64,000 nucleotides of DNA from Octopus sinensis (Eukaryota), in NCBI RefSeq assembly GCF_006345805.1, contig NC_043003.1, positions 63,612,001 through 63,676,000 of the forward strand, read 5' to 3'. This document shows positions 4,923 to 62,225 of the stretch, in pieces. The position numbers and the translations under genes were made by a program. The notes beneath the pieces were generated by a model that was not told the origin of the DNA, did no database searches, and was given only the letters and a program-made list of their open reading frames with translations. The number at the start of each line of letters is the position of its first letter. Within the stretch, counting starts at the first letter, position 1.

Positions 4923-5609
<687 letters not shown>

Positions 5610-13364: not shown

Positions 13365-13924
13365 ATAGGCGCAAGGCCTGAAATTTGTGGGGAAGGGACT
13401 AGTCGATTACATCGACCCCAGTGTTTCACTGATACTCAATTTATCGACTCCGAAAGGATGAAAGACAAAGTCGACCTCGGCGGAGTTTGAACTCAGAAGG
13501 TAGCGACAGAGAAATACCTATTTCTTTACTACCCACAAGGGGCTAAACACAGAAGGGACAGACAAACGGATTAAGTCGATTATATCGACCCTAGTGCGTA
13601 ACTGGTACTTATTTAATCGACCCCGAAAGGATGAAAGGCAAAGTTGACCTCGGCGGAATTTGAACTCAGAACGTAGCGGCAGAAGAAATACCTATTTCTT
13701 TACTACCCACAAGGAGCTAAACACAGAGGGGACAAACAAGGACAGACAAACGGATTAAGTCGATTATATCGACCCCAGTGCATAACTAGTACTTATTTAA
13801 TCGACCCCGAAAAGATGAAAGGCAAAGTTGACCTCGGCGGAATTTGAACTCAGAACGTAGCGGCAGATGAAATACGGCTACGCATTTCGCCTGACGTACT
13901 AACGTTTCTGCCAGCTCGCCGCCT
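13365..13924 (-). mobile_element. SINE family B tandem array (head plus three body units)
   Basis: One head at 13924; internal junctions tail-AAAGAAATA|GGTATT at 13518 and 13692. Confidence 0.92.
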
Positions 13925-23837: not shown

Positions 23838-23878
23838 AATATATATATATATATATATAATATATATATATATATATA

Positions 23879-23909
<31 letters not shown>

Positions 23910-23932
23910 GTATATATATATATATATATGTG

Positions 23933-23976
<44 letters not shown>

Positions 23977-24065
23977 GTGTGTGTTTGTGTGTGTGTGTGT
24001 GTGTGTATAATATATATATGTGTGTGTGTGTGTGTGTGTATTATATATATATATATATATGTGTG

Positions 24066-24099
<34 letters not shown>

Positions 24100-25098
24100 T
24101 GTGTGTTGTGTGTGTGTATTATATATATATATATGTGTGTGTGTGTGTATATATTATATGTATATATATATATATGTGTGTGTGTGTATTATATATATAT
24201 ATGTATATATATATGTAATATATATATATGTAATATATATATATGTATATATATATATATGTATTATATATATGTATATATATATATATGTATATAATAT
24301 ATATATGTATATTATATATATGTATATATAATATATGTATATATATATATTGTATATATATATATATGTATATATATATATGTATATATATATATATGTA
24401 TATATAATATATATATATATATATGTGTGTATATATATATATATATGTATATATATATGTATATATATATATGTATATATATATATATGAATATATATAT
24501 ATGTATATATATATATGTATATATATATGTATATATATATGTATATGTATATGTATATATGTATATGTATATATGTATGTAATGTATATGTATATATATG
24601 TATATATATATGTAATGTAATGTATATATATATATGCATATATATGTATGTATATTATGTAATGTATATGTATATATATGCATATATATATATATGTATG
24701 TATATATATGTAATGTATATGTATATATATGCATATATATATATATGTATGTATATATATGTAATGTATATGTATATATATGCATATATATATATGTATG
24801 TATATATATGTAATGTATATGTATATATATGCATATATATATATATGTATGTATATATATGTAATGTATATGTATATATATGCATATATATATATATGTA
24901 TGTATATATATGTAATGTATATGTATATATATATACATATATATATGTATGCATATATATGTAATGTATATGTATATATATATACATATATATATATGTA
25001 TATATATGTATATATACATATATATATGTATATATATATGTAATGTATATACATATATATATATATAATGTATAGGTATGTACATATATACGTATATG

Positions 25099-25129
<31 letters not shown>

Positions 25130-25152
25130 AGAAATATATATAATGTCTATAT

Positions 25153-25183
<31 letters not shown>

Positions 25184-25280
25184 CCTATATACATACACGC
25201 ACATATATATACACACATGTATACGTATATATATTTATATGTGTGTGTGTATGTATGCGTGTATGTATGCATGCATATGT
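23838..25280. repeat. About 1.4 kb (TA)/(TG) low-complexity tract with an approximately 50-bp higher-order repeat at 24600-24990
   Basis: Directly visible; unit GTAATGTATATGTATATATATGCATATATATATATATGTATGTATATATAT recurs about seven times. Confidence 0.95.
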
Positions 25281-27478: not shown

Positions 27479-27991
27479 AGGCAGAAAGCTGGCTGAAACG
27501 GTAGCACACCGGGCGAAATGAGTTCAAATTCGGCCGAAAGCGACTTTGCCCTTTATCCCTTCGGGGTCGATAAATTAAGTACCAGTGGAGGCACATGGTC
27601 TAGTGGTTAGAGCAGCGGACTCACGGTCGAAGGATCGCAGGTTCGAATCTCAGACCGGGCGATGTGTGTGTTTATGAGCGAAACACCTAAACTCCACGCA
27701 ACTCCGGCAGAAGGTATTGGCGAACTTCTGCTGACTCTTTCGCCAAAACTTTCTCTCACTCTTTCCTCCTCCATCTTGCAGCTCACCTGCGACGGACCGG
27801 CGTCCCATCCAGGTGGGGAACCTCTACGCCAAGGAAACCGGGAAACCGGCCCTATGAGCCAGGCATGACTTGAGATGGAACAAACAACAAATTAAGTACC
27901 AGTTACGCACTGGTGTCGATGTAATCGACTTAATCCCTTTGTCCTTGTTTGTTCCCTCTATGTTTAGACCCCTGTGTGCAATAAAGAAATA
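27479..27991 (+). mobile_element. SINE family B (GCAATAAAGAAATAA tail) hosting a C2 insertion
   Basis: The body is split by 27586-27888; flanks TATTACTAGTCTA / TATTATTAGTCTA are a probable TSD. Confidence 0.85.
27586..27888 (+). mobile_element. SINE C2: tRNA-Arg-like head with a different (RTE-like) tail
   Basis: 14-bp TSD AAATTAAGTACCAG (27572-27585, 27889-27902); head similar to 31411; tail CCTGCGACGGACCGGCGTCCCATCCAGG..GGAAACCGGGAAACCGGCCCTATGAGCC. Confidence 0.88.
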
Positions 27992-28012: not shown

Positions 28013-31000
28013 AGAGGTGAGCAAGCAGAATGGTTAGCACGCCGGGCAAAGTGCTTAGCGGCATTTTGTCTGACTTTATGTTCTGAGTTCAAATTCTGCC
28101 GAGGTCAGCTGCACCTTTCATCATTTCGGGGTCGATAAAATAAGTATCATTTGAGCACAGGTGGTCGATGTAATTGACTTTACCCCTCCCTCAGAATTGC
28201 TGGTTCTGTGCCAAAATTTGAACCCCAAATCAGTATAGTGCCCATTTCAACTTTGTGAAGATATTGACACAGAATGTAGTGTAGTATTACTCATCCGGTG
28301 TAAAAGTGACCGAGAGAACAGCATTCCCCCAACAACGGGACGCCGACCCGTAGAGAAGAGGGGAAAATCGATTACATCGACCCTAGAACCCGAATGGTAC
28401 GTTATTTTATAGAACATGAACGGCTGGAGGCAAGGACGACCTCGATGCGATTTGAACTCAGAATATGAAGAAAAGCATTTTGCCCGATGTGCTAACGATT
28501 AAAACTACGATACACAGTAAACTTCCCGCAATAGGTGAAAATCCGCGAAGTAGAAACAGTACTGTATATATATGTTTTTAATTATTTTTATAAATTGTAT
28601 ATATTTATTTTATTATAAATGCAAAACAACACCACAGAAGAATTGACGAAAGCTTAAATAATAAACCGCGATAGGTGAACCGCAATATGTATTCCTTTCT
28701 ACTACAGACACAAGTGTATGAAATTTTGTGGGAGGACGATACTCGATTACATCGACACCAGTTCCCGTCTGGTATTTATTTCATCGACCCCCAAAGTGAT
28801 GAACGATAAAGTCGAACTCAGCGGAATTTGAACTCAGAACGTAAAAACGAACGAAATGCTGCTAAGCCGTTCGTCTGAAGTGTTAACAATTCTGCCAGCT
28901 CGCCACTTTATATTTTGATATATTCTTTTCTACTCTAGGCACAAGGCCCGAAATGTTTGGGGAGTGGGGCCAGTCGATTAGATCGACCCCAGTACGCAAC
29001 TGTTACTTAATTTATCGACCCCGAAAGCATGAAAGGCAAAGTCGAACTTGGCGGAATTTGAACTCAGAACGTAAAGACAGACGAAATACTGCTAAGCATT
29101 TCGCCTGGCGTGCTAACAATTCTGCCAGCTCACCGCCTTATACTATGATATATTATAAGACATTTACTATGGTACTGTACTGTTTCTCCAAAGTTTCGGT
29201 CTTGAAATATAATTTCGATTTCATTAGTATCATTTGTATCTAAGATGGTAACTACAACAAAAAATTTTTTTTGTTGCGAAACGCACTAATGTCAATTTAT
29301 CTTTTTACAACCTACTTCCGGTTCATGAATAAGAGGCAATAATAGTATAAGGTGGTGAGCTGGCAGAAACGTTAGCACGCCGGGCGAAATGCTTAGCAGT
29401 ATTTCGTCTGCCGTTACGTTCTCTGTGTTTAGCCCCTTGTGGGTAGTAAAGAAATAAGCATTTCATCTGTCTTTACATTCTGAGTTCAAATTCCACTGAC
29501 GTTGGCTTTGTCTTTTACCTTTTAAGGGTCAATAAATTAAGTACCAGTTAGCCACTGGGATCGATGTAATCGACTCCCCCAACACTCCAAATTGCTAGTC
29601 TGGTGTCAAAATTTGAAGTCTATAAAATAATTGTTTAGAGCGGCGAGCTGGCAGAAACGTTAGCATGGCGGGCGAAATACTTAGCAGTATTCTCTAGGTT
29701 CTGAGTTCAAATTACGCCGAGTAGAAAAGAATGCTTAGCGGTATTTCGTCTGTCACTACGTTCTGAGTTCAAATTCCGCCGAGGTAGACTTTACCTTTCA
29801 TCCTTTTGGGGTCGATGAAATAAGTACCAGTTACGCACTGGGGTTTATGTAATCGATTAGCTTCTTTCCCCCCAAATTTACAAGGTCTTGTGCCTGAAGT
29901 AAAGACAATATAAGTACCAACTGAGCACTGGGGTCGATGTAATCGACTTCCCCGCCTCGTAATCGCTAGTCTTGCACCAAAATTTAAAACCAATAATATA
30001 ATACGCTTTTTTTTTTTATCGATCGATCGTTTAATTGTACCCTTTTTTTACGCAAACCGGTTTCTACCAAACCTCTGCTTTTTGTCCATTTCCGTGTACT
30101 TTGCAGCTCTACTCATTTTAGCAATTAAATATTTTTGTCAATAAACTTACTACATGAGGCATCTTTTCATAAACCGGAAACGAATGAATAAATCTACAGC
30201 AATAATCTGGACGAAAGTTTGCATTTCAGGGGTATTTATACATATGCGTATAACAAGCATAACAAGGGAAGCACAAATAATACAAAGGCAGAGTAAACTA
30301 CATACATAATAATAATTTTCTTCTCTAGGTACATGGCCTGAAATATCAGGGGAGAGTAAAGTCGATGACATTGATTCCTGTACTTGACTGGTGCTTAATT
30401 TATCGACTTCGATAGGATGAAAGGCAAAGTCGAACTTGCGGGAATTTGAACTCAGAACGTAGCGACAACGAAAAACCGCTAAGCATTCTTTTCTACTTTA
30501 GGCACAAGGCCCGAAATTTTTGCAACTGGTGCTTAATTTACCGAAAGGAGGAAAGGCAAAGTCGACCTCGGCGGAATTTGAACTCACAACGTAAAGACAG
30601 ACAAAATGCTGTTAAGCATTTCGCCCGGCGTGCTTAACGTTTCTGCCAGTTCGCTGCCTTTCGTGTCACTCTATATTGGTTTGAAGTTTTGGCACATGGT
30701 GGTTATCAATTTCCGGAGAGGGGTTAAGTCAATTATATTGATTCAAGTGCTCATCTGGTGCTTGTTTTAACGACTCCGATAAGATGAAAGGCAAAGTCGA
30801 CTTCGGCGGAATTTGAACTCAGAGCGTAAAGATGGACGTAATGCCGCTAAGCTTTCTTCCAACTCACCTTCCTTCGCCAGTTACTACAAAAACGATAATA
30901 AATCGTTTATGTAGATCGACTCCAGTGCGTAACTGGTTCTTAATTTATCGACCCCGAAAGGATGAAATGCAAAGTCGACTTCGGCGGAATTTGAACACAG

Positions 31001-31390
31001 AGCGTAAAGACAGACGAAATACAGCTAAGCATTTCGCCCGGCGTGCTAACGTCTTTGATGCCAGATCACCGCCTTCATTAAAACGGACGAAATACTGCTA
31101 AGCATTTTGTCCAGCGTGCTAACGATTCAACCAGGTTCGCCGTCCTACTGCATACATAATAATGACTGGAATAATAGAAATCATACATAACAACGGTTTC
31201 TAATTTTATCATAAGACCAGCAATTTTAGGCAAGGGCTCGACAGATAATTTTTTATCTACTCCGAAAGAATAAAAAGCAAAGTCGACCTGAACAGGAATT
31301 GAGCTCAGCATGTAAAGAACCGGAGGAAATACCACTAAGTCTAATTTTTTTCCGACGCGCTATAGATTTTGTCAAGTAGCCACCCTTCGT
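28013..31390. mobile_element. Dense cluster of about 12 SINE family B copies and fragments in both orientations
   Basis: Recurrent GAATTTGAACTCAGAACG / GAGTTCAAATTCCGCCGAGG and CTGGGGTCGATGTAATCGAC motifs at about 28013, 28350, 28700, 28928, 29350, 29638, 29930, 30320, 30495, 30675, 30915, 31200. Confidence 0.88.
28515..28689 (+). mobile_element. Possible pogo/Tigger-like MITE fragment
   Basis: Starts CAGTAAACTTCCCGCAATAG with internal CCGC(A/G)ATAGGTGAA repeats; no intact right TIR. Confidence 0.35.
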
Positions 31391-34799: not shown

Positions 34800-36485
34800 T
34801 TAGGATGGTGAGTTGGGAGAGCAGAGGTGTCGATGTAATGGATTTAACCCCTTCCTCAGAAATTGCTGACCACCATGTGCCAAAACTTGAAACCAATATA
34901 AAGTGACACGAAAGGCGGCGAGCTGGCAGAAACGTTAGCAGGCCGGGCGAAATGCGTAGCCGTATTTCGTCTGCCGTTACGTTCTGTGTTCAAATTCCGC
35001 CGAGGTCGACTTTGCCTTTCATCCTTCCGGGGTCGATTAAATAAGTACCTTTCACTGGGGTCGATATAATCGACTTAATCCATTTGTCTGTCCTTGTTTG
35101 TCCCTTCTGTGTTTAGCCCCTTGTGGGTAGTAAAGAAATAGGTATTTCGTCTGCCGTTACGTTCTGAGTTCAAATTTAGCCTTCTCTGTACCACTCAGGC
35201 GGCAACCTTCCAGCCCACGGGTCTATTTGTGTTGACGTTGCTAAAGGTCGTTTTACAAGTTGAGAGTGCAAATCCCGAACTCAACCTTTTTATGACACGC
35301 AAAGGAAATGTTGGGTCTATTCTTTGACATGTCGCACCCCTACACACGCACGCACGCACACACACGCACACACGCACACATACACACACACACGGCACTA
35401 GAGCAACGTAAATTAAAGTGTTTCACTGACAATCGTGAGTACAACATCCTAACCACTAGTTGTTTCAAATTTTGGTACGGGGCCAGCAAATTTCGAAGAG
35501 AGGTGAAGCTGATTTCATCGACCACAGTATATGACTGGTACTAATTTTAAGTCCCCCGAAAGGGTGAAGAGACGAAATACCGGTCAGCATTTTGTCCAGC
35601 GTTTTCTCCGGTATGTTATCGATTCTGGCAGCTCGCTGCATTTATGACAACCACAATGATCCTTTCTACTATAGGCAAAAGGCCTGAAATTTCTTAGGGG
35701 ACAGAGCTTGTCAATTACATTGATCCCGGTATTTAACTGATACCTATTTCATCGATCCCGAAGGGACGGAAGGCAAATGCGACTGCATTAGAAATTGGAG
35801 TCAGAGCATAGAAACGGACGAAATACCAGTAAACATTCTGTCCGGCATGCTAACGATTCTTTTATACTCTAGGCACAAGGCCCGAAATTTTGGGGGAGGG
35901 AGTCAATCAATTAGATCGACCCCAGTATACAACTGGTACATAATTTATCGACCCCGAAAGGATGAAAGGCAAAGTCGACTTCGGCGGAATTTGAACTCAG
36001 AACGTAGCGGCAGACGAAATACCTATTTCTTTACTACCCACAAGGGGCTAAACACAGAGAGGACAAACAAGGACAGACAACCGGATTAAGTCGATTATAT
36101 TGACCCCAGTGTGTAACTGGTACTTAATTTATCGACACCGAAAGGATGAAAGACAAAGTCTACCTCGGCGGACTTTGAACTCAGAACGTAGCAGCAGACG
36201 AAACACCGATAAGCATTTCGCCCGGCGTGCTAACGTTTCTACCAGCTCGTCATTTTTATGAGAACTATGATAATCCTGTCTTCTATGGGCACAAGGACTG
36301 AAATTTGGTGGAAGCGGGGTGGTAGTCGTTCACATCGACCCCAGTACTCAACTGGTACTGAATTTATCGACTCCGAAAAAGACAGAAGGCAAAGTCGACA
36401 TCGGTGAAATTTGAACTCAGAACGTAAGAACTGCTGCTGAGCACTTCGCCCCGCATGTTAACGATTGTGCCAGCTCGTCACCTTT
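34800..36485. mobile_element. Cluster of SINE family B copies, including dimers at 34913-35180 (+) and 35862-36250 (-)
   Basis: Tail|GGTATTTC junctions at 35141 and 36023. Confidence 0.9.
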
Positions 36486-36940
36486 ATGAGAACTGTAATA
36501 ATAAATTATTATACTATTTCAAAAACACAAAGCACCCTCTCAGTATTAGTGAACCACAGCTGGCTTTTCTCCAGTTACACTTTACTCATAAGATACTTGA
36601 CTCTCAGACAAAAATATAGATTTAACCTCTAAAGAAAATCAAAGAATTTGGATATCTCAGACAACAAAATAGATTTAAGCACTGAAGAAAATTTAAGAAA
36701 TTGGATATTTTCAAAACACCAGTTTCCTACTAAACAACGAATACAAAATCTAGTTAAAGTGGTATCGTTCGTTCATTCATTGTTAAGTAGTTTTCCAAGA
36801 CATGGAAACACGAAAATCCGATTAACTGGAGGTATCAAGTATATTTGGTAAGTTATAAAAATAATACCAATATATTAAAGAAATCAGATAGAAAAAAATT
36901 CGTGCGAATGGAATTTATAAAGAAAATGAAATAAAGTTTT

Positions 36941-37971: not shown

Positions 37972-38790
37972 AAGGGTGGCGAGCTGGCAGAATCGTTAGC
38001 ACGCCGGGCGAAATGCTTGGCGGCATTTCGTCTGCGGCTACGCTGTGAGTTCAAATTTCACCGAGGTCGACTTTGCCTTTCATCCTTTCGGGGTCGATTA
38101 AATAAGTACCAGCAACGCACTGGGGTCGATGTAATCGACTTAATCTGTTTGTCTGTCCTTGTTTGTCCTCTCTGTGTTTAGCCCCTTGTGGGTAGTAAAG
38201 AAATAGAAATAGGTATTTTGTCTGTTGCAACGTTCTGAGTTCAAATTCCGCCGAGATCGACTTTGCCTTTCATCCTTTCGGGGTCGATATAATCGACTTA
38301 ATCCCTTTGTCCGTCCTTGTTTGTCCCCTCTATATTTAGCCCCCTGTGGGCAATAAAGAAATAAATATAAGTAAGTAAGTAAGCAGGCAGAAATGTTAGT
38401 ATGCCGGACGAAATGCTTAGTAAATACAGACGAAATGTCGCTGAGATTGATTATACCTTTCACCCTTTCGGGGTTGATAAATTAGGTACTTGTTGAGCAC
38501 TTAGGTCAATATAATCGACTTACCCTCGCCCCAAATTACTGGCCTTGTGCTAAAATTTGAAACCAACATAATCAGAAAATAGGGCGATGAGCTGGCAGAA
38601 TCATTAGTATAGCGAGCAAAATGCTTAGCCGCATTTTGTCAGTTTCCACCTGAGTGAAAATTCGGCCGAGGCCCACTTTACCTTTCGATGATCGATAAAG
38701 CAGGTACCAGCTGAGAACTGGCATTGATGTAATCGATTTACTCTATGCCATCCGAAAGTGCTGGCCTTGTACCAAAATTTGAAACCAATA
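37972..38790 (+). mobile_element. Nested and tandem SINE family B array (four units)
   Basis: Head 37972, junction tail|GGTATTTTG at 38212, GCAATAAAGAAATAA tail near 38364, further heads near 38386 and 38581. Confidence 0.9.
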
Positions 38791-44833: not shown

Positions 44834-45312
44834 TAAAGCATCTTACTCCGTAAAACATAATAGTTGAACAATATCGTAATGGACTTACTATGGGTGCCTT
44901 CGTAAATGGATTGTCCTCAATTATTCTTTCTGTTATTTCAGTTTGTTTGTTGACTATGTTATAGGACTATGTTATAGGACTATGTCATAAGCCTATGGTT
45001 TATAACAAATGCAACACTTAATAATTACTTAGGAAAGTCACAAATCTACTAGAGGATACTTAATAAAATATTTCTAACTGACTTCCATTTATCTATATAT
45101 GATTTCTCAGGTGTCCAAGTCTTCTCACTGTATCTTAGCCTATCTATAAAATCATTGTTTTTAGGGACTTTAATGTACACTAGAATTTGCTCTCCCTTCT
45201 CACTGAAACTGCTCACACTGAGGGTTAAATCGTTTGCAATTCCGAACTGTTTCCCTAAATTATATCCACTCGTATTTTCCCTCTTCCCAGAAAGACTTAC
45301 TAACACAGTACC

Positions 45313-45516
45313 TATTTCTTTACTACCCACAAGGTGCTAAACACAGAGAGGACAAACAAGGACAGACAAACGGATTAAGTCAATTACATCGATCCCAGTG
45401 CGTAACTGGTACTTATTTAATCGATCCCGAAAGGATGAAAAGCAAAGTCGACCTCGGCGGAATTTGAACTCACAGCATTCACCCGGCGTGCTAACGTTTC
45501 TGCCAGCTCGCCGCCT
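45313..45516 (-). mobile_element. SINE family B with GTAGTAAAGAAATA tail and TSD
   Basis: 16-bp TSD TTACTAAC(A/G)CAGTACC at 45297-45312 and 45517-45532. Confidence 0.93.
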
Positions 45517-46157
45517 TTACTAACGCAGTACCATTAATGTTTCACCCAGATATTATTGCCTCGGCAGCCATAGATCACTGAATCATTTTTTAATGAAGGA
45601 AACATAGCGTGCAATACCTCAAACACCTTTCGGTACTTCAGATTAGATAACTGCTCAGAACTTCAGTTCTATGCCGACTACTCCAAGCACTAAATGTTTG
45701 TTTACTCTAAGCCACTCGAGACAGCTAAAGCAGATAGCTGCAACCATCTTGCTTAGTATATCCCTCTACAGTCTAAAAACAACCAACGTTTATAACCTTC
45801 ACATCCCGATGTACTTTACCTGCCACTGAACTGCAACAGGGTAGGCAATAACAGTGTTACTAACTGAGATCCTTTTATCCACGACTGCGGATAAGGCTAC
45901 TATGAAAAATGCAAGCGGTACTGCCGTGCTTTGCGCAGTCGGGAAACTCACTCACCTAAGTATAAATCGGTACTATGCTGAAGTAGTTACTGTTGTAAAA
46001 TGTAGAATCTGAGAATTTATTTTCTGTTCACTACAATTTATCAATGAACGATTAAATGGATTTGGCTGTACCAAAAACTGAATGGGAACTAAGAGAAATC
46101 TAAATTGTTTTCGGATTGTTAGTCCTGCTTGCTTTCCCTGGGAGTTTTACTTCTAAG

Positions 46158-46410: not shown

Positions 46411-46479
46411 TCGCTACGCACCTTTGCTTTGAGATTAATGCAACGTTGGTTTCAAACTTTCGCACAAGGTCAACAAGTT

Positions 46480-47303
46480 CAGAAGAGAGAGAGAGAGAGA
46501 GAAAGCGAAAGCGAATGTAAGCCGATTATATCGACACCAGAGTTCAACTAGTACTTATTTTATTGACCCTCAAAAAAAATGAAGAGAAAAGTCGACCTCA
46601 GCGGAATTTGAACTTAGAACGTAAAGACGGACGAAATACCTATTTCTTTACTAACCACAAGGGGCTAAACACAGAGAGGACAAACAAGGACAGACAAACG
46701 GATTAAGTCGACTATATCGACCCCAGTGCGTAAATGGTACTTAATTTATCGACCCCGAAAAGATGAAAGGCAAAGTCGACCTCGGCGGGATTTGAACTCA
46801 GAACGTAGCGGCAGACGAAATACGGCAAAGCATTTCGCCTGGCGTGCTAGCAGTTCTACCACATTACCGCCTTAGGGGTTAATATAATATTCTTTTCTAC
46901 TCTAGGCACAAGGCCCGACATTTTGCGGGGAGGGAGCCAGTCGATTAGATCGATCCTAGTACACAACTGGTACTTAATTTATCGACCTCGAAAGGATGAA
47001 AGGCAAAGTCGGCATCGGTGGAATGTGAACTCAGAACGTAATGACAGACGAAATACTCCGAAGCATTTTGCCTGACGTGCTAACATTTCTTATTTCTTTA
47101 TTGCCCACAAGGGGCTAAACCTAGAGGGGACAAACAAGGACAGACAAAGGGATTAAGTCGATTACATCGACTCCAGTGCATAACTGGTACTTATTTAATC
47201 GACCCCGAAAGGATGAAAGGCTAAGTAGACCTCGGTGGAATTTGAATTCAGAACGTAGCGGCATTTCGCCTGGCGTGCTAACGCTTCTGCCGGCTTGCCG
47301 TCT
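46480..47303 (-). mobile_element. SINE family B arrays using all three tail types
   Basis: Junction GGTATTTC at 46640 and GAAATGTTAG at 47090; the 46892-47303 block is flanked by GGGGTTAATATAATATT repeats (about 46875 and 47305). Confidence 0.9.
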
Positions 47304-48040
47304 TGGGGTTAATATAATATTATCATGTAGAATGTTATCAGTTGCGCTGTAGTATGTTATTTTTCAAGTTTAATTTTAGCACAACCGAGTGTCAAACAGA
47401 CATTTTTTTTTTATATCCATAATTGTCTTCGTGTACTAATTTTTCTTTCACTATTTATGTTTTCCCCTTCGTTGCGTCTCCCTACCCCCTTGTTCATTCT
47501 ATCAAACTTCCTTTCTTATGTTTCCTGTGTTTTCTTCTCTGTTTTTGTTTCATTCTACGCCAGCAGTTTATTCCAAACATTTCATTCAACTGAAAGCCTC
47601 ATCAATTCTCCAGAGATCATGTGTCTACAAAACAAAGAGAAAAAAATACAAAAAGCAACCACAAAAAAAAAAACGGAAAACGAACAGATGACAGATTTAT
47701 CTCAGCTGTTGTTAATGAGGTTTTATGTCTTTTAGAATATTGCCTCTGTATCAGTTTAAGCAATTATATCAACCGAAATCCATCGACATTAAGTTAATAT
47801 AAGGCCAGGCTTTCCTATGTAAATAATAAAAAAAAAAACGCTTTAAAAAATTCTTGGTAATATAGAGATAATAGATGGTAGTATGATCGCTTAAATAGTA
47901 TTGGCTGCAGGATATGACTAAGTTATGCTTCGTGAGACAGTTTGGGAACATTGCTTCCGGTCAGCCTTTCGCCTAGAGAGGCGCATCAGATGGAAATTGT
48001 TGTTACTTTTGCAACGCACGCTGCATTTTTAGTTTATCAG

Positions 48041-56830: not shown

Positions 56831-57352
56831 TCTACTGTCTTAGTCATCAGCTCGATTAGGACAACTGTGAGGTTAACCAACTGCCAAAATAACCACCATA
56901 TTATAATTGTTGGAGAAGTTAAACGACTAGACTTTAGTCGTTTAAAGCTAGACAGTAGAGGAATAGGACATTAAATTATTGTCTCGTAGTTTTTGAACGG
57001 GCTTTGTCTTTGAACTCGTGAGAGTTCAAAAGTATAGCACACGCTACATTATGTTTTTGAGCGTGTTATAGGATTCTAAATTACCTCGATGCATCTAGCT
57101 GCAAGCTATAGTTACTGAGCTTTTTCTAAGAATGTTTCACAGATGCAGGCTTCACTTGCAAGATGGTTAAAATGTTTGTTTTGCAACAACCTGGCTTCGA
57201 GCTCAGTCCCATTATTGGCACCTTGGGCAACTGTTTTACACCGTAGTCTTGGGTCAACAAAAGCGTTGTGAATGAAAATTAGTGGACAAAAACTGCGTGA
57301 ACCATCCCTGTGTTTTAGGTGGAAAACTTAGTCCGTTATTTTCTTTGATACC

Positions 57353-57767
57353 TATTTCTTTACTACCCACAAGGGGCTAAACACAGAGAGGACAAACAAG
57401 GACAGACAAACGGATTAAGTCGATTATATCGATCCCAGTGCGTAACTAGTACTTAATTAATCGACCCCGGAAGGATGAAAGGCAAAATCGACCTCGGGGG
57501 AAATTGAACTCAGAACGTAGCGGCATACGAAATACCTTTTTGTTTACTACCCACAAGCCGCTAAACACAGAGAGGACAAACAAGGACAGACAAACGGATT
57601 AAGTCGATTATATCGACCCCAGTGCGTAACTGGTACTTAATTTATCGACCCCGAAAGGATGAAAGGCAAAGTCGACCTCTGCGGAATTTGAACTCAGAAC
57701 GTAACGGCAGACGAAATACGGCTACGCATTTCGCCCGGCGTGCTAGCGATTCTGCCAGTTCACCGCC
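57353..57767 (-). mobile_element. SINE family B dimer with TSD
   Basis: 14-bp TSD TTTTCTTTGATACC (57339-57352, 57768-57781); internal junction tail|GGTATTTC at 57536. Confidence 0.95.
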
Positions 57768-58709
57768 TTTTCTTTGATACCTTGTAGATTTGGTGGCGTT
57801 CGCTTTTCCTGCAAACGTTCGATCCCGCCTCCGGTTTGAGAATAACTTCCTCATTTCCCTTTATGAGAAAAGAGGCCCTAAAAGAGTTTGTTGATGTGCG
57901 CTGGCTTTCTTCCTCTGACTAAATCATTAAAAACATAAATAAAGTAGCGTTCAGTCTAGTGGGAGATTTATCTATGATCAAATTAACGCTGCATGAAGCT
58001 AGAGATAAGCACTGGCTTTATGGATCTCTGCGATTTGTAAATGTCAAAATATTGATTATTAACAACAGGCAATTAACCCAATAAATAAATTAGCTTCAAT
58101 AATTTACAATAAAAACGTTGGTAAAAAAAATAATAATAAGTACGAAAGAAAAAACACACAAAACAAGGAGAAAAAAACTCTGTTGAAAATAGCGATGCTT
58201 CACTAGCATGGCCATTAAAACAATGATGCGAACATGGTTAAAAGAACTTAAGTTATTCAGGGTAAAAATGGTAAAACTAGGAAACAATCCATCATTTTGT
58301 TTTCTTTTGTTGTTGTAAAATACTTTCAGTAAGACAGGAAAGCACATCTGCTTCGCACAGTATTTTAGGTTAAAGGCAGAAAAGCTATTACAAAAATGTA
58401 ATGTAATATAAATCCAGACCCATGTTGGGGAAGCCTGGTTATTTTCCTTGCTGTCTTTAAAAAGAACAAAACAAAGAAAGCCAAACTGGATAATGTAAAC
58501 CTAGGTAAACAATGCCTCTCCACTAAAAAACAAAATAAGTGGTCACAGCATAAAGGTACTTAAGTGAATGTCGCAATGCACATCATTTTTTTTTTTTATT
58601 TTGAGGGATGGATGAAATATGAAGCTGGTTTTAGTTCATTAGGTTTACGCTCAGAGTTCGAATCCTGTCGCTGTCTTTCATACTTTTGCGTTTCATTTTT
58701 CTGGGTTGA

Positions 58710-59190: not shown

Positions 59191-59651
59191 ACTCATTGTT
59201 TTCTTTTGATATCGCTTCATGTAACAGTCCTTACTGGATGTCAACCTGATACCGAGGACAGCTATTGTCATGTAACGGTGGTGTTTCGCCACAGAATGTG
59301 GCTATATAAAAGGCATAGAATTAATTTAGACCTGCGATATAGAGATATAAATCAAAATAATAAGGCAAAAAGCTACAACTCTTTTATTAGGTATCAAAAA
59401 ATATGGCGAGGCTTTTGTATATGCTAGGTTTACCTATTTCTTTACTACCCACAAGGGGCTAAACACAGAGAGGACAAACAAGGACAGACAAACGGATTAA
59501 GTCGATTATATCGACCCCAGTGCGTAACTAGTACTTAATTTATCGACCCCGAAAGGATGAAAGGCAAAGTCGACCTTGGCGGAATTTGAACTCAGAACGT
59601 AACGACAGACGAAATACCACTAAGCATTTCGCCCGGCGTGCTAACGTTTCT

Positions 59652-61375
59652 TATTTCTTTATTACCCACTAGGGGCGACACAGAAAGGGACACTAAGAAA
59701 CATGGGGACATATAACATTATAATTAAACTTTATGAACATGAATTGTTAAACGAAAAAATGATTAAATGAAAGCGATACCAACGGCCCCGTCCGTCAGCA
59801 TCACTTACCTGTCCTTTGTTTTTCATAGTCACTTGATTTCCTTGCCAATACGAACAAATTCCATATCCATTCTTACTCCGAAATACTCATCCATATTTTC
59901 CACGAATTCATCGCTCATTCTTATATCTTTCACCTCCCAATTCTCGCATTCACACATCACCATAAAGTCACCTATGTTCTTCTTTCAATCACAGCATACC
60001 TAGTCTCACCAACATCATACCATTATACTCTTCCATTAGACTTTTAACTTCTTTCTGTTCAGTCATAGTACAAATGTACGGCCTGATATCGATTTCAATC
60101 TCTTGTGTGTGTGTATTCTTTTTTCTTTTGTTTTCTTGTTGGGGGGAGCGGGTGGGTTCAATGTATGCATGGATAGGGTGGGACTCAGAGGCGTGGGTGG
60201 TTTTGGGTGGATGGAGTTCCATATTATTTTCTTTTCCACGTATTCTTCTCTTCCTCTTACTTCCAGCTTCCTTCCATTTCTGTGTATTCTCTTCCTCTGT
60301 TCCTTCTCCTCTGGTTTCTGTTCTTCTCTCTCTGGTTCGGGATCCATTTCTTTCCCTGGGGGAGGGCAGAAGGCTCTTATGTGACCCCTCAGGCCACACT
60401 TGTAACAACGTGGAGCCCTGCCCTCCACCCACACTCTCATGATCACTTCTCCCAGTCTGATGCTTTCCGTCAGGTCCACCAGTACCTCGGTCTCTGCCTG
60501 TACGTTCAGCTCCACTGTTACGCCTCTCCAGCCCTCGGACTTAACCGAGGCATGGAGAATATCCACTTCGTCCTCGTGGCCGCTGATCACAGCCGCCACA
60601 ATCCATTCTGCCTCCACGTTTGGTGGCACTCCCTCCACCCTTTATTCGTGTAATCCTCCTGTTTAAATACGTAGGTAACAGTGTTACCTTTTCCGACTTC
60701 ACCGCCTTCGCCGCCATCTTCCTCGCTGCAGATTCACTTTTAAAATGCACAACTACGGTCCCATACTTGGATCCTCGAGTCAGAAAATTTATTTCCTCCT
60801 CAGTTCTTCGCAGGGCTTCCTCTATCCATTCCATGGTTACAACTTCTACCCTCTTCCTTTCGTTTGCGAACACCCTGTAAACAATGGTCCTCTTATCATA
60901 CCATTCTTTTCTCCTGGGTGTCGGTGATAGTTCCACTCACCGCTTTCCTTTTCATGTGTTTCTGGTACTGGTAGCTTGGCCAAGTCGACCCCTTTCTCTT
61001 CCGCCTTCTTGGTTACACCGGCATAAGTATAACTCAGCTCTTTTCCAAATTCCTCGCTGCCATTTCTAGCTCCTTCTCAGACAAGTCTGATAAAGACTCG
61101 AAAACTCCAGCCTTTTCCTCCATCAGCTTCACTGCAATTGCCTGTTCCAGTTCCTCATCTGTCGTGGACAAGTCTGTTAGAGACTCATAGTCCATTTCCT
61201 TCTGTCTGACAGACCGAAAACGGCCGCCAAAACAGAAAAAAGTTTAACGCGCTGAACGAGCGAAACGCGAAACCGCGTCAACGCCGTTCAGAATTTCCAC
61301 AACAACAACCACGCTTTTTGTTCTTTTTTACCGAATTTTCAGGAGCCGAAAAAAACACGACCGACGTCAAACGAA
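59652..61375 (-). mobile_element. Complete non-autonomous ORF1-only Tx1/L1-clade element (1724 bp)
   Basis: 14-bp TSD GTGCTAACGTTTCT (59638-59651, 61376-61389); about 180-bp 5' UTR, gag-like ORF, about 177-bp 3' UTR ending GCCCCTAGTGGGTAATAAAGAAATAA; no endonuclease or RT motif. Confidence 0.9.
59829..61195 (-). pseudogene. Tx1 ORF1 homologue (CCHC zinc knuckle), several frameshifts
   Basis: ATG at 61195; FLTRGSKYGTVVVHFKSE..LLPTYLNRR aligns with YLTRDKRFAAVVVYFKSE..WLPTYLGRR of the 15066 ORF; CYKCGLRGHIRAFC knuckle. Confidence 0.85.
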
Positions 61376-62225
61376 GTGCTAACGTTTCTACCAGCTCGCC
61401 GCCTTTGCTAGGTTTACCGAGGATGTTTTTCAAGAAACTCATCTACCCTTTTCTTTATGACACCAAATTCGTCAAAAATATATTAGGTTGTTTGTTTTCA
61501 ATTGCCACATTCTGTTTAACCTCGATTTCTCTATCTTCGGGCTTCACACATTTTTCACATTCTTTATCAGACAGAATCATGGTATAGTCATGTCAGTGAG
61601 TAGGCATGTTTTATTTTAAAATCTTGAACAACGATATCAGTCCAGTTGACGTTTATGGTGTAGTCTGGGTGGATTGTAAAATTCCATAAAACTGTTACAT
61701 CTCTTGCTTCGATTTCTGGTAAAGTATGGTGTTCATTCCAACTTCTATCATGTTCTGAACCATAACGTTTGCAAAGTACTCAATAAATGATTTAGCCCAC
61801 CCGATCGTACCCGGCTTTATATTCAGTTGGAACCAAGGAAGATCACTCTGAAGTTACATGTTCTATTGTCTTGATTTGTTCGTCACAGACTCTGCATTTT
61901 GGGTCTGGTTCATTTTTGAGGACGTTTGCTTAGCATTTTCTTATAAATAAGTTCTGGGCTTAGGCAGCAAGGAAAAATTCTTCTGGTTTCGCTTTTAACC
62001 CTCAGTTGCATAACCACTGATGGGTTTCTGGTTGGCCAGCATCAACAGCCTGTACATTATTTACATTGACGGATATGTTCTCATCAACATTTCGGCTGAT
62101 TTACTCTCCAGCCTTTATCAGGTGTCCTGGTAGAATTTTGAACCCAACACTGGCTTCTCATTCCTAAGGTATTATTTTTTTATTATATTTTTATTATTAT
62201 TATTATTATTATTTATTCAAGGCAC

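What the first reader, a model, noticed from the sequence alone, without database searches (positions are those of the whole stretch)
57339..57781. SINE B subfamily inserts at 5'-GGTA, a motif in its own head, producing self-nested arrays
Seen: of 11 copies with the GTGGGTAGTAAAGAAATA-type tail, 10 are immediately followed by GGTA (the exception, 29457, has AGCA). Three are in unrelated flanks with TSDs that begin with GGTA on the element strand: GGTACTGYGTTAGTAA (45297/45517), GGTATCAAAGAAAA (57339/57768) and GGTAAACCTAGCA (59422/61406). GGTA is also present in the upstream TSD copy, so it belongs to the target and not to the element. The other seven (13518, 13692, 35141, 36023, 38212, 46640, 57536) resume SINE B itself at GGTATTT in the head. 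Established: crocodilian SINEU shares target preference with a Tx1 family. Inference: a sequence-specific Tx1 endonuclease mobilises this SINE, and the SINE is its own most abundant target, creating a self-amplifying loop.
Basis: partly seen in the sequence, partly recalled or inferred. Interest (0 to 1): 0.85.

Follow-up and report, generated by a model that had tools for sequence, protein, structure and literature searches.

The report
SINE that lands in SINE heads
A young octopus SINE subfamily inserts almost only in front of the four bases GGTA, and mostly at one such site in the tRNA-like head of older related SINEs, so it builds head-to-tail SINE arrays; this is a real and fairly unusual target preference, but the enzyme and the exact joining mechanism are not shown.

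Summary
Eleven copies in the window end in GTGGGTAGTAAAGAAATA. Nine are followed directly by GGTA, one by GGTA after a 6-nt tail slip, and one by AGCA. Three copies in unique flanks have 13-16 nt target-site duplications (TSDs) that begin with GGTA on both sides, so GGTA belongs to the target. A twelfth copy, in Octopus sinensis, shows the same.

The preference goes beyond four bases. Seven of about 16 GGTA sites at SINE-head position 47 are occupied, against 3 of about 345 other GGTA sites. Tails with the same last 10 nt but GGGCAA or GGGTAA in place of GGGTAG never use GGTA (0 of 5).

The arrays do not come from one master dimer. The downstream units carry four different 3' modules, and the C- and D-type ones are older (8-22% diverged, against 2-6% for B).

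They are also not classical nested insertions. None of the 8 arrays has an orphan head or an internal TSD, and single TSDs flank whole arrays.

Best model: cleavage at ^GGTA in a resident head, with the 5' junction formed by annealing of the new cDNA to the resident's homologous head.

Tx1 involvement is untested. The "self-amplifying loop" is unsupported. Four of the seven B heads that span the site read CGTA there, not GGTA.

The parts
57768..57781 (-). 5' copy of the TSD GGTATCAAAGAAAA that flanks the whole dimer
   Evidence: 14/14 identical to 57339-57352
57537..57767 (-). Unit 1: full-length SINE with head, core and B 3' module. The tail is mutated to GTAGTAAACAAAAA and the head reads GCCGTATTT.
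57353..57536 (-). Unit 2: SINE lacking head positions 1-46. It starts with GGTATTTCG directly after the tail of unit 1 and has an intact B tail.
   Evidence: (period 184, 92% match)
57339..57352 (-). 3' copy of the TSD GGTATCAAAGAAAA
13372..13923 (-). Three-unit array: B full length, then B from position 47, then C-type from position 47. Both junctions read AAGAAATA|GGTATTTC.
29351..29625 (+). B unit (internal deletion 73-194) followed by an old D-type unit. The junction reads AAGAAATA|AGCATTTC, the only non-GGTA case. The array is flanked by AATAATWGTWTA (10/12).
34914..35176 (+). B full length followed by a 36-nt piece that starts at GGTATTTCG (cut off downstream)
35853..36252 (-). B unit followed by a C-type unit from position 47 (GGTATTTCG). 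The C tail in turn abuts another head at position 20.
37975..38363 (+). B unit with tail slip (GAAATAGAAATA) followed by an A-type unit from position 47 (GGTATTTTG)
46437..46871 (-). B unit followed by an old D-type unit from position 47. Head 1-48 of the B unit is far more diverged than its body.
45297..45532 (-). Solitary B copy (45313-45516) between TSD copies GGTACTGYGTTAGTAA
59422..59651 (-). Solitary B copy, positions 15-229 plus tail (59435-59651), and its 3' TSD GGTAAACCTAGCA (59422-59434)
59652..61375 (-). 1.7-kb ORF1-only retroposon with the related tail GGGTAATAAAGAAATA, nested at head position 15 of the B copy. Its TSD AGAAACGTTAGCAC lies at 59638-59651 and 61376-61389.
   Evidence: a relative at the same head position in O. 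sinensis
61376..61418 (-). Separated 5' end of the same B copy (head 1-28, of which positions 15-28 are the 5' TSD copy of the nested element) and the 5' TSD GGTAAACCTAGCA (61406-61418)
46875..47317 (-). Comparison array: A-type unit followed by a C-type unit from head position 15 (AAGAAATA|AGAAATGTTAGCAC). The whole array is flanked by TTATATTAACCCC.

Best explanation
SINE B is a young subfamily of an octopus tRNA-derived SINE family. All subfamilies share a head and a core and differ in their 3' module.

Proposed mechanism:
1. The borrowed LINE machinery starts target-primed reverse transcription at a bottom-strand nick directly 5' of GGTA on the element strand. The second nick lies 5-16 nt downstream, so insertions in unique DNA carry TSDs that begin with GGTA.
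2. The most used site is the GGTA at position 47-50 of the head of resident SINEs in the same orientation. Most of these residents are older.
3. At that site, the new cDNA, once it has copied B's own head, is homologous to the resident head just upstream of the nick. The 5' junction forms by annealing to it.
4. The product is [head][B body and tail][resident from GGTATTTCG onward]. It has no orphan head and no internal TSD, and it is still flanked by the resident's old TSD. Repeats of this process give three-unit arrays.

Shown: the GGTA target, the head hot spot, the independent origin of the junctions, the age order for the C- and D-type residents (B younger than the resident), and the array-level TSDs.

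Inferred: the homology-guided 5' joining, and the reason for the hot spot. That reason could be a longer endonuclease recognition site, easier completion where homology exists, or pairing of the primer with GGUA read through from the source copy's flank.
For: GGTA belongs to the target:
- The TSDs start with GGTA on both sides in 3 of 3 unique flanks.
- The same holds for a 5'-truncated B copy in O. sinensis: tail, then GGTAC, with a 5-nt TSD.

The preference is tail-specific:
- 10 of 11 B tails use GGTA. None of 5 A-like tails does, although they share the last 10 nt (Fisher p = 0.0014).

The head is a hot spot:
- 7 of about 16 head GGTA sites are occupied, against 3 of about 345 other GGTA sites (p = 9e-9).

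The junctions arose independently and the C/D residents are older:
- Downstream units carry B, A, C and D 3' modules.
- The C- and D-type downstream units are 8-22% from their window consensus. B bodies are 1.7-6.0% from theirs.

Array-level TSDs:
- 57339/57768 is 14/14.
- The A-plus-C comparison array is 13/13.
- A29 is 10/12, decayed as expected for an old resident.
- There is no sharp TSD around the array with the 17%-diverged D unit.

A resident-derived head:
- In the array at 46437-46871, head 1-48 of the upstream unit has 11/48 mismatches, against 7/183 in its body (p = 1e-4).

True nested insertion into the head does occur:
- The 1.7-kb element, whose 5' end is not homologous to the head, leaves the orphan head plus a 14-nt TSD.
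- A diverged relative sits at the same head position in O. sinensis.

Initiation at the RNA 3' end:
- The tail slip GAAATAGAAATA at 38200-38211 fits initiation there.
Against: - The head-age signal rests on one array. Without it, upstream-unit heads are not significantly older than their bodies (p = 0.28).
- For B-on-B arrays, including the one at 57339-57781, the two units are equally diverged (4.4% each). There, retrotransposition of a dimer RNA or a one-step template switch fits as well.
- Head subtype markers (positions 6 and 19) do not always match the type of the downstream unit.
- The window holds only 11 B copies and one extra locus. No empty orthologous sites were available.
- Family consensus sequences were built from about 11 copies each, so divergences are rough.
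- Homology-guided 5' joining is argued by analogy with chimeric L1 insertions in human cells, which I recall from memory and did not verify here.
Confidence: 0.6

Rival explanations
1. One-step template switching. Reverse transcription starts on the RNA of the downstream SINE at an ordinary target, stops near head position 47, jumps to the 3' end of a B RNA and copies it to the end. The array is born in one event with one TSD.
For: - Whole arrays have single TSDs and there are no orphan heads.
- Upstream units are always full length.
- In the B-on-B dimer at 57339-57781, both units are equally diverged.
- Template switching that makes chimeric SINEs is described in birds (PMC5729268, listed).
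Against: - Downstream C and D units are 8-22% diverged, against 2-6% for B. All D copies in the window are old, so co-activity is unlikely.
- The array with the old D unit has no sharp TSD, whereas a young one-step event should have one.
- The old head in front of a young B body at 46641-46871 would need two switches.
- The model does not explain why unique-flank B copies sit at GGTA.
Confidence: 0.17
2. Dimer or multimer source genes. An array, once formed, is transcribed through and retrotransposed as a unit, so many junctions are copies of a few masters.
For: - The TSD around the dimer at 57339-57781 is perfect.
- The consensus contains no TTTT terminator between the B tail and the following unit (sequence).
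- The two B units at 13519-13923 share a private base (A at position 95).
Against: - Downstream units have four different 3' modules and unrelated private changes, so at least five junctions arose separately.
- At most, this explains the three B-on-B junctions.
Confidence: 0.12
3. No sequence-specific endonuclease. The GGTA choice is carried by the RNA. Every B source copy is followed by GGTA, Pol III reads through the tail, and the nicked target must end in TACC-3' to pair with the read-through GGUA.
For: - A and B tails have the same last 10 nt but different targets.
- All B copies are followed by GGTA, so read-through RNAs would carry it.
- Read-through target sequence is known to guide precise insertion of site-specific LINEs such as R1 (recalled from memory, not tested).
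Against: - At 29457 the junction is AGCA with no added G, so the RNA there seems to have ended at ...AAAUA.
- No preference beyond GGTA appears in the four unique flanks, where the next bases are C, T, A and C.
- The 50-fold excess at heads is not explained.
Confidence: 0.15
4. GGTA is simply the last four bases of the element, and the TSDs were called four bases too long.
For: Every B tail but one is followed by it.
Against: - GGTA also precedes the element in the upstream TSD copy in 4 of 4 unique-flank copies. Chance for this is about 6e-11.
- At 29457 the tail is complete without it.
Confidence: 0.02

Closest known systems
SINEU-3 and Tx1-Mar in crocodilians (Kojima 2015, PMC4494074)
   Same: A SINE with a strong preference for one site in another abundant repeat. 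Tandem copies arise at that site. The target preference is used to infer the LINE partner.
   Different: - There the target is a Mariner DNA transposon, and tandem copies sandwich a TSD.
- Here the target is the head of related SINEs, the arrays have no internal TSD and no orphan head, and no LINE with the same target has been seen.
Site-specific LINEs of the Tx1 group (Tx1L in Tx1D, Keno, Mutsu, Dewa, Kibi, Koshi)
   Same: Insertion at a defined short sequence inside multicopy sequences, including small-RNA genes. The target choice is ascribed to the endonuclease (introduction of PMC4494074; some family names and targets recalled from memory).
   Different: No reverse transcriptase or endonuclease gene is in the window. 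The clade of the partner is unknown. The recognised core seen here is only 4 nt.
Alu insertion into A-rich tails and linkers of older Alus
   Same: A SINE whose own family supplies many of its target sites, giving head-to-tail clusters (recalled from memory).
   Different: For Alu this follows from the loose TTTT/AA preference of L1 and leaves ordinary TSDs. Here the site is a specific non-A-rich tetranucleotide in the promoter-bearing head, and the resident is decapitated.
Chimeric L1 insertions in cultured human cells (Gilbert 2002; Symer 2002)
   Same: The nascent cDNA anneals to a homologous resident element upstream of the nick, so the 5' junction lies inside homology and no TSD is seen (recalled from memory; not found in the held library).
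   Different: In L1 this is rare and deletes the DNA in between. Here the homologous head abuts the nick, so nothing is lost, and it seems to be the usual outcome (8 of 8).
Mosaic ('jigsaw') mollusc SINEs and template-switch SINE chimeras (PMC4758252, PMC5729268)
   Same: SINE families built from exchangeable head, core and tail modules. This window has one head and core with at least four 3' modules.
   Different: Those papers explain the mosaics by RNA-level switching. Here the DNA-level route (a tail module landing in a resident head) would give the same mosaics.

Membership tests
tRNA-derived SINE mobilised by a LINE | Short non-coding element with a Pol III-type head (A and B boxes) | tested here: inconclusive
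   Units are about 230 nt. A B-box-like GAGTTCAAATTCC is visible. ARAGORN and Rfam call no tRNA in the window.
tRNA-derived SINE mobilised by a LINE | Flanked by target-site duplications | tested here: met
   TSDs of 13-16 nt at 45297/45517, 57339/57768 and 59422/61406.
tRNA-derived SINE mobilised by a LINE | 3' end shared with a LINE of the same genome | tested here: inconclusive
   Only an ORF1-only 1.7-kb element shares the last 40 nt or so. No element with reverse transcriptase was found.
Target-specific non-LTR retrotransposition (Tx1-like behaviour) | Most copies sit at the same short target sequence, which is part of the TSD | tested here: met
   10 of 11 copies in the window, and 1 of 1 in O. 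sinensis.
Target-specific non-LTR retrotransposition (Tx1-like behaviour) | A LINE of the Tx1 clade with the same tail and the same target | not testable with these tools
   No octopus genome could be scanned. Searches of metagenome and prokaryote contigs and of the protein index gave nothing usable.
Classical nested TPRT insertion | Orphan 5' piece of the resident plus an internal TSD on both sides of the insert | tested here: not met
   Absent in all 8 B arrays. Present for the 1.7-kb element at 59652-61375.
Dimeric SINE from one master (Alu-like) | Both units and the junction are the same in all copies | tested here: not met
   Second units carry B, A, C or D modules and differ widely in divergence.

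The most novel reading that the evidence does not exclude
The tRNA-like head of octopus SINEs serves as a dedicated landing pad for one family of retroposon tails, with at least two separate positions.
- Position 47 (^GGTA) is used by the GGGTAG tail.
- Position 15 (^AGAAAYGTTAGCAC) is used by the GGGCAA/GGGTAA tails, including an ORF1-only 1.7-kb element seen at the same head position in two species.

A landing replaces the resident's body behind its own Pol III promoter ('head capture'). This would generate mosaic SINE families without RNA template switching. It could account for the hundreds of 'unclassified SINE families' reported for Octopus vulgaris.

Four B heads in the window carry a G-to-C change that removes the GGTA, which would make those copies poorer targets for their own machinery.
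Probability: 0.3. Interest if true: 0.7.

Novelty: new variant of a known kind. Interest (0 to 1): 0.5.

Why it matters
Target-specific SINEs are rare. SINEU-3 in crocodilians is the main described case.

A tRNA-derived SINE that aims at the head of its relatives would have three consequences:
1. It would give a DNA-level route to modular SINE evolution.
2. It would explain TSD-less head-to-tail SINE arrays and inflated family counts in cephalopod repeat libraries. SINEs make up 11.6% of the O. vulgaris genome, in 893 unclassified families (PMC13282606).
3. It would give a simple handle, the shared target, for finding the unknown LINE partner.

It also matters for annotation. Such arrays are easily called as new 'dimeric' families or as satellites with a 184-nt period.

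Tried and rejected
Attempts to get more genome sequence:
- A search of the protein index with a peptide translated from the SINE head gave no candidates.
- A search with the ORF1-like protein gave none.
- Exact look-ups of window ORFs found nothing on record.
- Exact-pattern scans for the B tail and the SINE core gave no matches: two scans of metagenome contigs and one of prokaryote genome contigs.
- The exhaustive HMMER search gave ORF1 relatives. One of them led to a single 20.7-kb Octopus sinensis locus. This identified the genus and added one B copy.

Attempts to identify the LINE clade:
- Pfam on the ORF1-like frames and on ten homologues showed only a CCHC knuckle.
- The window has no reverse transcriptase or endonuclease ORF.

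Attempts to recognise the head:
- Rfam and ARAGORN do not recognise it.

Ideas considered and set aside:
- I tested whether all upstream-unit heads are older than their bodies. Only one array shows this clearly, so I do not use it as a general result.
- Extended target similarity among the four unique flanks: none is convincing. An AAAY motif 8-11 nt upstream occurs in three of four, which is weak in AT-rich DNA.
- Pairing between the B tail and the head arm TATTTC is present, but A-type tails share it and go elsewhere.
- Unequal crossing-over cannot create the tail-to-position-47 junction. It could only expand existing arrays.

Full report
**What the window is.** The window is AT-rich (63% A+T) eukaryote DNA, full of microsatellites and copies of one SINE family.
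- Using the 231-nt upstream unit of the finding as a query gives 59 blastn matches.
- The same family occurs in Octopus sinensis. A 162-nt copy there is 93.8% identical.
- The closest relative of the only protein-like ORF in the window is O. sinensis LOC118767527.
- The window therefore comes from an octopus or a close relative.
- All copies share a tRNA-like head and a core (positions 1 to about 165). At least four different 3' modules follow:
  - B: ...GTTTAGCCCCTTGTGGGTAGTAAAGAAATA
  - A: ...GTGGGCAATAAAGAAATA
  - C: ...GCCTAGAGTAGAAAAGAAT
  - D: ...GTGCCAAAATTTGAAACCAAT

**Check of the observation.**
Nine are followed directly by GGTA. One is followed by GGTA after a repeat of the last six tail bases (38200-38211). 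One is followed by AGCA (29457).
- The three TSDs are exact: GGTATCAAAGAAAA (57339-57352 / 57768-57781), GGTACTGYGTTAGTAA (45297-45312 / 45517-45532) and GGTAAACCTAGCA (59422-59434 / 61406-61418).
- GGTA stands in the upstream copy each time, so it is target sequence. At a frequency of 0.0028 per position, three of three by chance is about 2e-8.
- A 5'-truncated B copy in O. sinensis (L001 6001-6165) is followed by GGTAC and has a 5-nt TSD, GGTAC. It lies in the antisense strand of another SINE's core. That is independent confirmation in a second genome.

**The preference is specific to the B tail and stronger than four bases.**
- Five elements have tails with the same last 10 nt but GGGCAA or GGGTAA instead of GGGTAG. 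They are followed by AATA, AATA, TATA, AGAAAT and AGAAAC, never GGTA. This is 10 of 11 against 0 of 5, p = 0.0014.
- The window holds 361 GGTA sites on both strands. About 16 of them are the site at head position 47-50, and seven of those carry a B tail directly upstream. Only three of the other 345 or so do (p = 9e-9).
- None of the roughly 35 antisense GGTA sites in SINE cores in the window is occupied.

**What the arrays are not.**
- They are not copies of one master dimer. The unit downstream of the junction carries a B module (13519, 57353, and probably 35141), an A module (38212), a C module (13372-13518, 35853-36023) or a D module (46437-46640, 29457-29625).
- They are not plain nested insertions either. 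In none of the eight arrays is the upstream full-length unit preceded by the resident's orphan head (positions 1-46) with a repeated target.
- Instead a single TSD flanks the whole array:
  - 14/14 at 57339/57768
  - 10/12 at 29338/29626
  - 13/13 around a comparable A-on-C array (46875/47305)
  - 16/17 around an 850-bp nest of five SINE pieces (30297/31147)

**Age order.**
- B bodies differ from the window's B consensus by 1.7-6.0%.
- The C and D units downstream of B tails differ from their consensus by 8.3% (C at 35853), 16.2% (C at 13372), 16.7% (D at 46437) and 21.9% (D at 29457). All D copies in the window are 13% or more diverged.
- These consensus sequences come from about 11 copies each and are rough, but the gap is large. 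B therefore arrived in front of much older elements. This argues against birth of such arrays in one reverse-transcription event.
- The array with the 17%-diverged D unit has no sharp TSD, as expected if the TSD is as old as the D unit.
- In that array the upstream unit is a mosaic. Positions 1-48 have 11 mismatches, and positions 49-231 have 7 of 183 (p = 1e-4). Its head is the old resident's head, and the change-over lies within a few bases of the insertion site.
- This is the only array where the head signal is clear. Without it, the pooled difference is not significant.

**A control inside the window.**
- The solitary B copy at 59435-61405 is split by a 1.7-kb element (59652-61375). That element has a related tail (GGGTAATAAAGAAATA), an ORF1-like frame with a CCHC knuckle and a 5' end unrelated to the SINE head.
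- Here the classical picture is complete: head positions 1-28 upstream and a 14-nt TSD, AGAAACGTTAGCAC, on both sides.
- A diverged relative (44% protein identity) in O. sinensis sits at the same head position of a C-type SINE at an unrelated locus, with the TSD AGAAAYGTTAGCACGCCG.
- An A-type SINE uses the same position (47091). There the insert's 5' end is homologous to the head, and again no orphan head is left.
- So orphan heads appear when the incoming 5' end is foreign and are missing when it is a SINE head.

**Model.**
- The simplest reading is target-primed reverse transcription from a nick 5' of GGTA. The 5' junction is completed by annealing of the new cDNA (the complement of B's head) to the resident's homologous head just upstream.
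- This gives [head][B body and tail][resident from GGTATTTCG], keeps the resident's TSD and leaves no internal duplication.
- It resembles the chimeric L1 insertions described in cultured human cells. I recall these from memory and could not confirm them in the held library.
- The 50-fold excess at heads may reflect a longer recognition site. The foreign-ended 1.7-kb element at one head position in two species points that way for its own tail type. Alternatively, completion may simply be easier where homology is available. The four unique flanks show no convincing similarity beyond GGTA.

- 'Tx1' is untested. No reverse transcriptase or endonuclease gene is in the window. Pfam on the ORF1-like protein and its homologues shows only zf-CCHC. 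The cited precedent is correct: SINEU and Tx1-Mar share a preference for Mariner-N4_AMi, although tandem SINEU-3 copies there sandwich a TSD (PMC4494074). O. vulgaris has recently active L1-Tx1, CR1, RTE and Dong-R4 LINEs (PMC13282606), so Tx1 is possible but not indicated.
- 'Its own head' needs correction. Only 9 of 30 intact heads read GGTA at the site. Four of the seven B-unit heads that span it read CGTA there (13866, 34949, 46814, 57710), and no other head in the window reads CGTA.
- The 'self-amplifying loop' is not supported. Each landing leaves one promoter-bearing head and one GGTA junction, so neither targets nor sources multiply by this step.

**Remaining rivals.**
- For B-on-B arrays, including the one in the finding, both units are 4.4% diverged. 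Retrotransposition of a read-through dimer RNA or a one-step template switch cannot be excluded.
- The two B units at 13519-13923 share a private base (position 95). This suggests local duplication or a common source.
- The GGTA choice could also be carried by read-through GGUA in the template RNA rather than by the endonuclease. The junction at 29457 (AGCA, no added G) speaks against an RNA-borne G.

**Verdict.** I rate it a new variant of a known kind, target-specific non-LTR retrotransposition, with moderate interest.

Noticed in passing
window 59652-61375 (-); L001 9458-11055: A 1.7-kb retroposon with only an ORF1-like gene (CCHC knuckle) and an A-like tail. It sits at head position 15 of a SINE with a 14-nt TSD. 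A diverged relative in Octopus sinensis (LOC118767527) sits at the same head position of a different SINE at an unrelated locus. This is a second site-specific landing place in the SINE head.
   Followed up: partly
window 13866, 34949, 46814, 57710 (all -/+ as): Four B-unit heads read GCCGTATTT where other heads read GCGGTATTT or similar. This one-base change removes the GGTA target. No other head in the window reads CGTA at this site. All four are the upstream units of B arrays.
   Followed up: partly
window 29730 (+), 30489 (-), 35852 (-): C-type tails (..GTAGAAAAGAAT) also abut 5'-truncated SINE heads, at position 38 (|GCTTAGCGG, twice) and position 20 (|CGTTAGCA). Head-to-tail joining at tail-specific head positions is therefore general in this family.
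   Followed up: partly
window 30297-31163 (-): A nest of five SINE pieces (about 850 bp) is flanked by one 17-nt TSD, ATTATTATGTATGYAGT. It includes an orphan head piece (31086-31142) in front of a full unit, so the classical nested form also occurs.
   Followed up: no
window 27587-27888 (+): An unrelated tRNA-like SINE (it starts GGAGGCACATGGTCTAGTGGTTAGAGC and has a B box GGTTCGAATC) is inserted in the core of an A-type SINE, with TSD AAATTAAGTACCAGT.
   Followed up: no
window 2953 (-), 10639 (+), 40100 (+), 52984 (-), 53319 (-): A further SINE type has the core GGGGTCGATTTGCTCGACT and the end ..GCAGTCAAATGACTGAAACAAGTAAAAGAG. In two of the five copies (10639, 53319) it runs into (TA)n.
   Followed up: no
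window 23839-25240; 4923-5609: Very long microsatellites: (AT)n of 1.4 kb and (GATA)n of 0.7 kb.
   Followed up: no
window 36245-36300 and 36480-36510 (-): Two neighbouring SINE units are both preceded by AGTTCTCATAAA..T and both start with the odd GACGAGCTGG. This looks like a long TSD that runs into the head, i.e. another 5' junction formed inside head homology.
   Followed up: no
junctions, e.g. window 36018-36031; head positions 35-57: The junction GAAATA-GG-TATTTC is a near-palindrome. In the intact head, CGAAATGC and GGTATTTCG are the two arms of a predicted hairpin, so the nick site lies at the base of the 3' arm.
   Followed up: no
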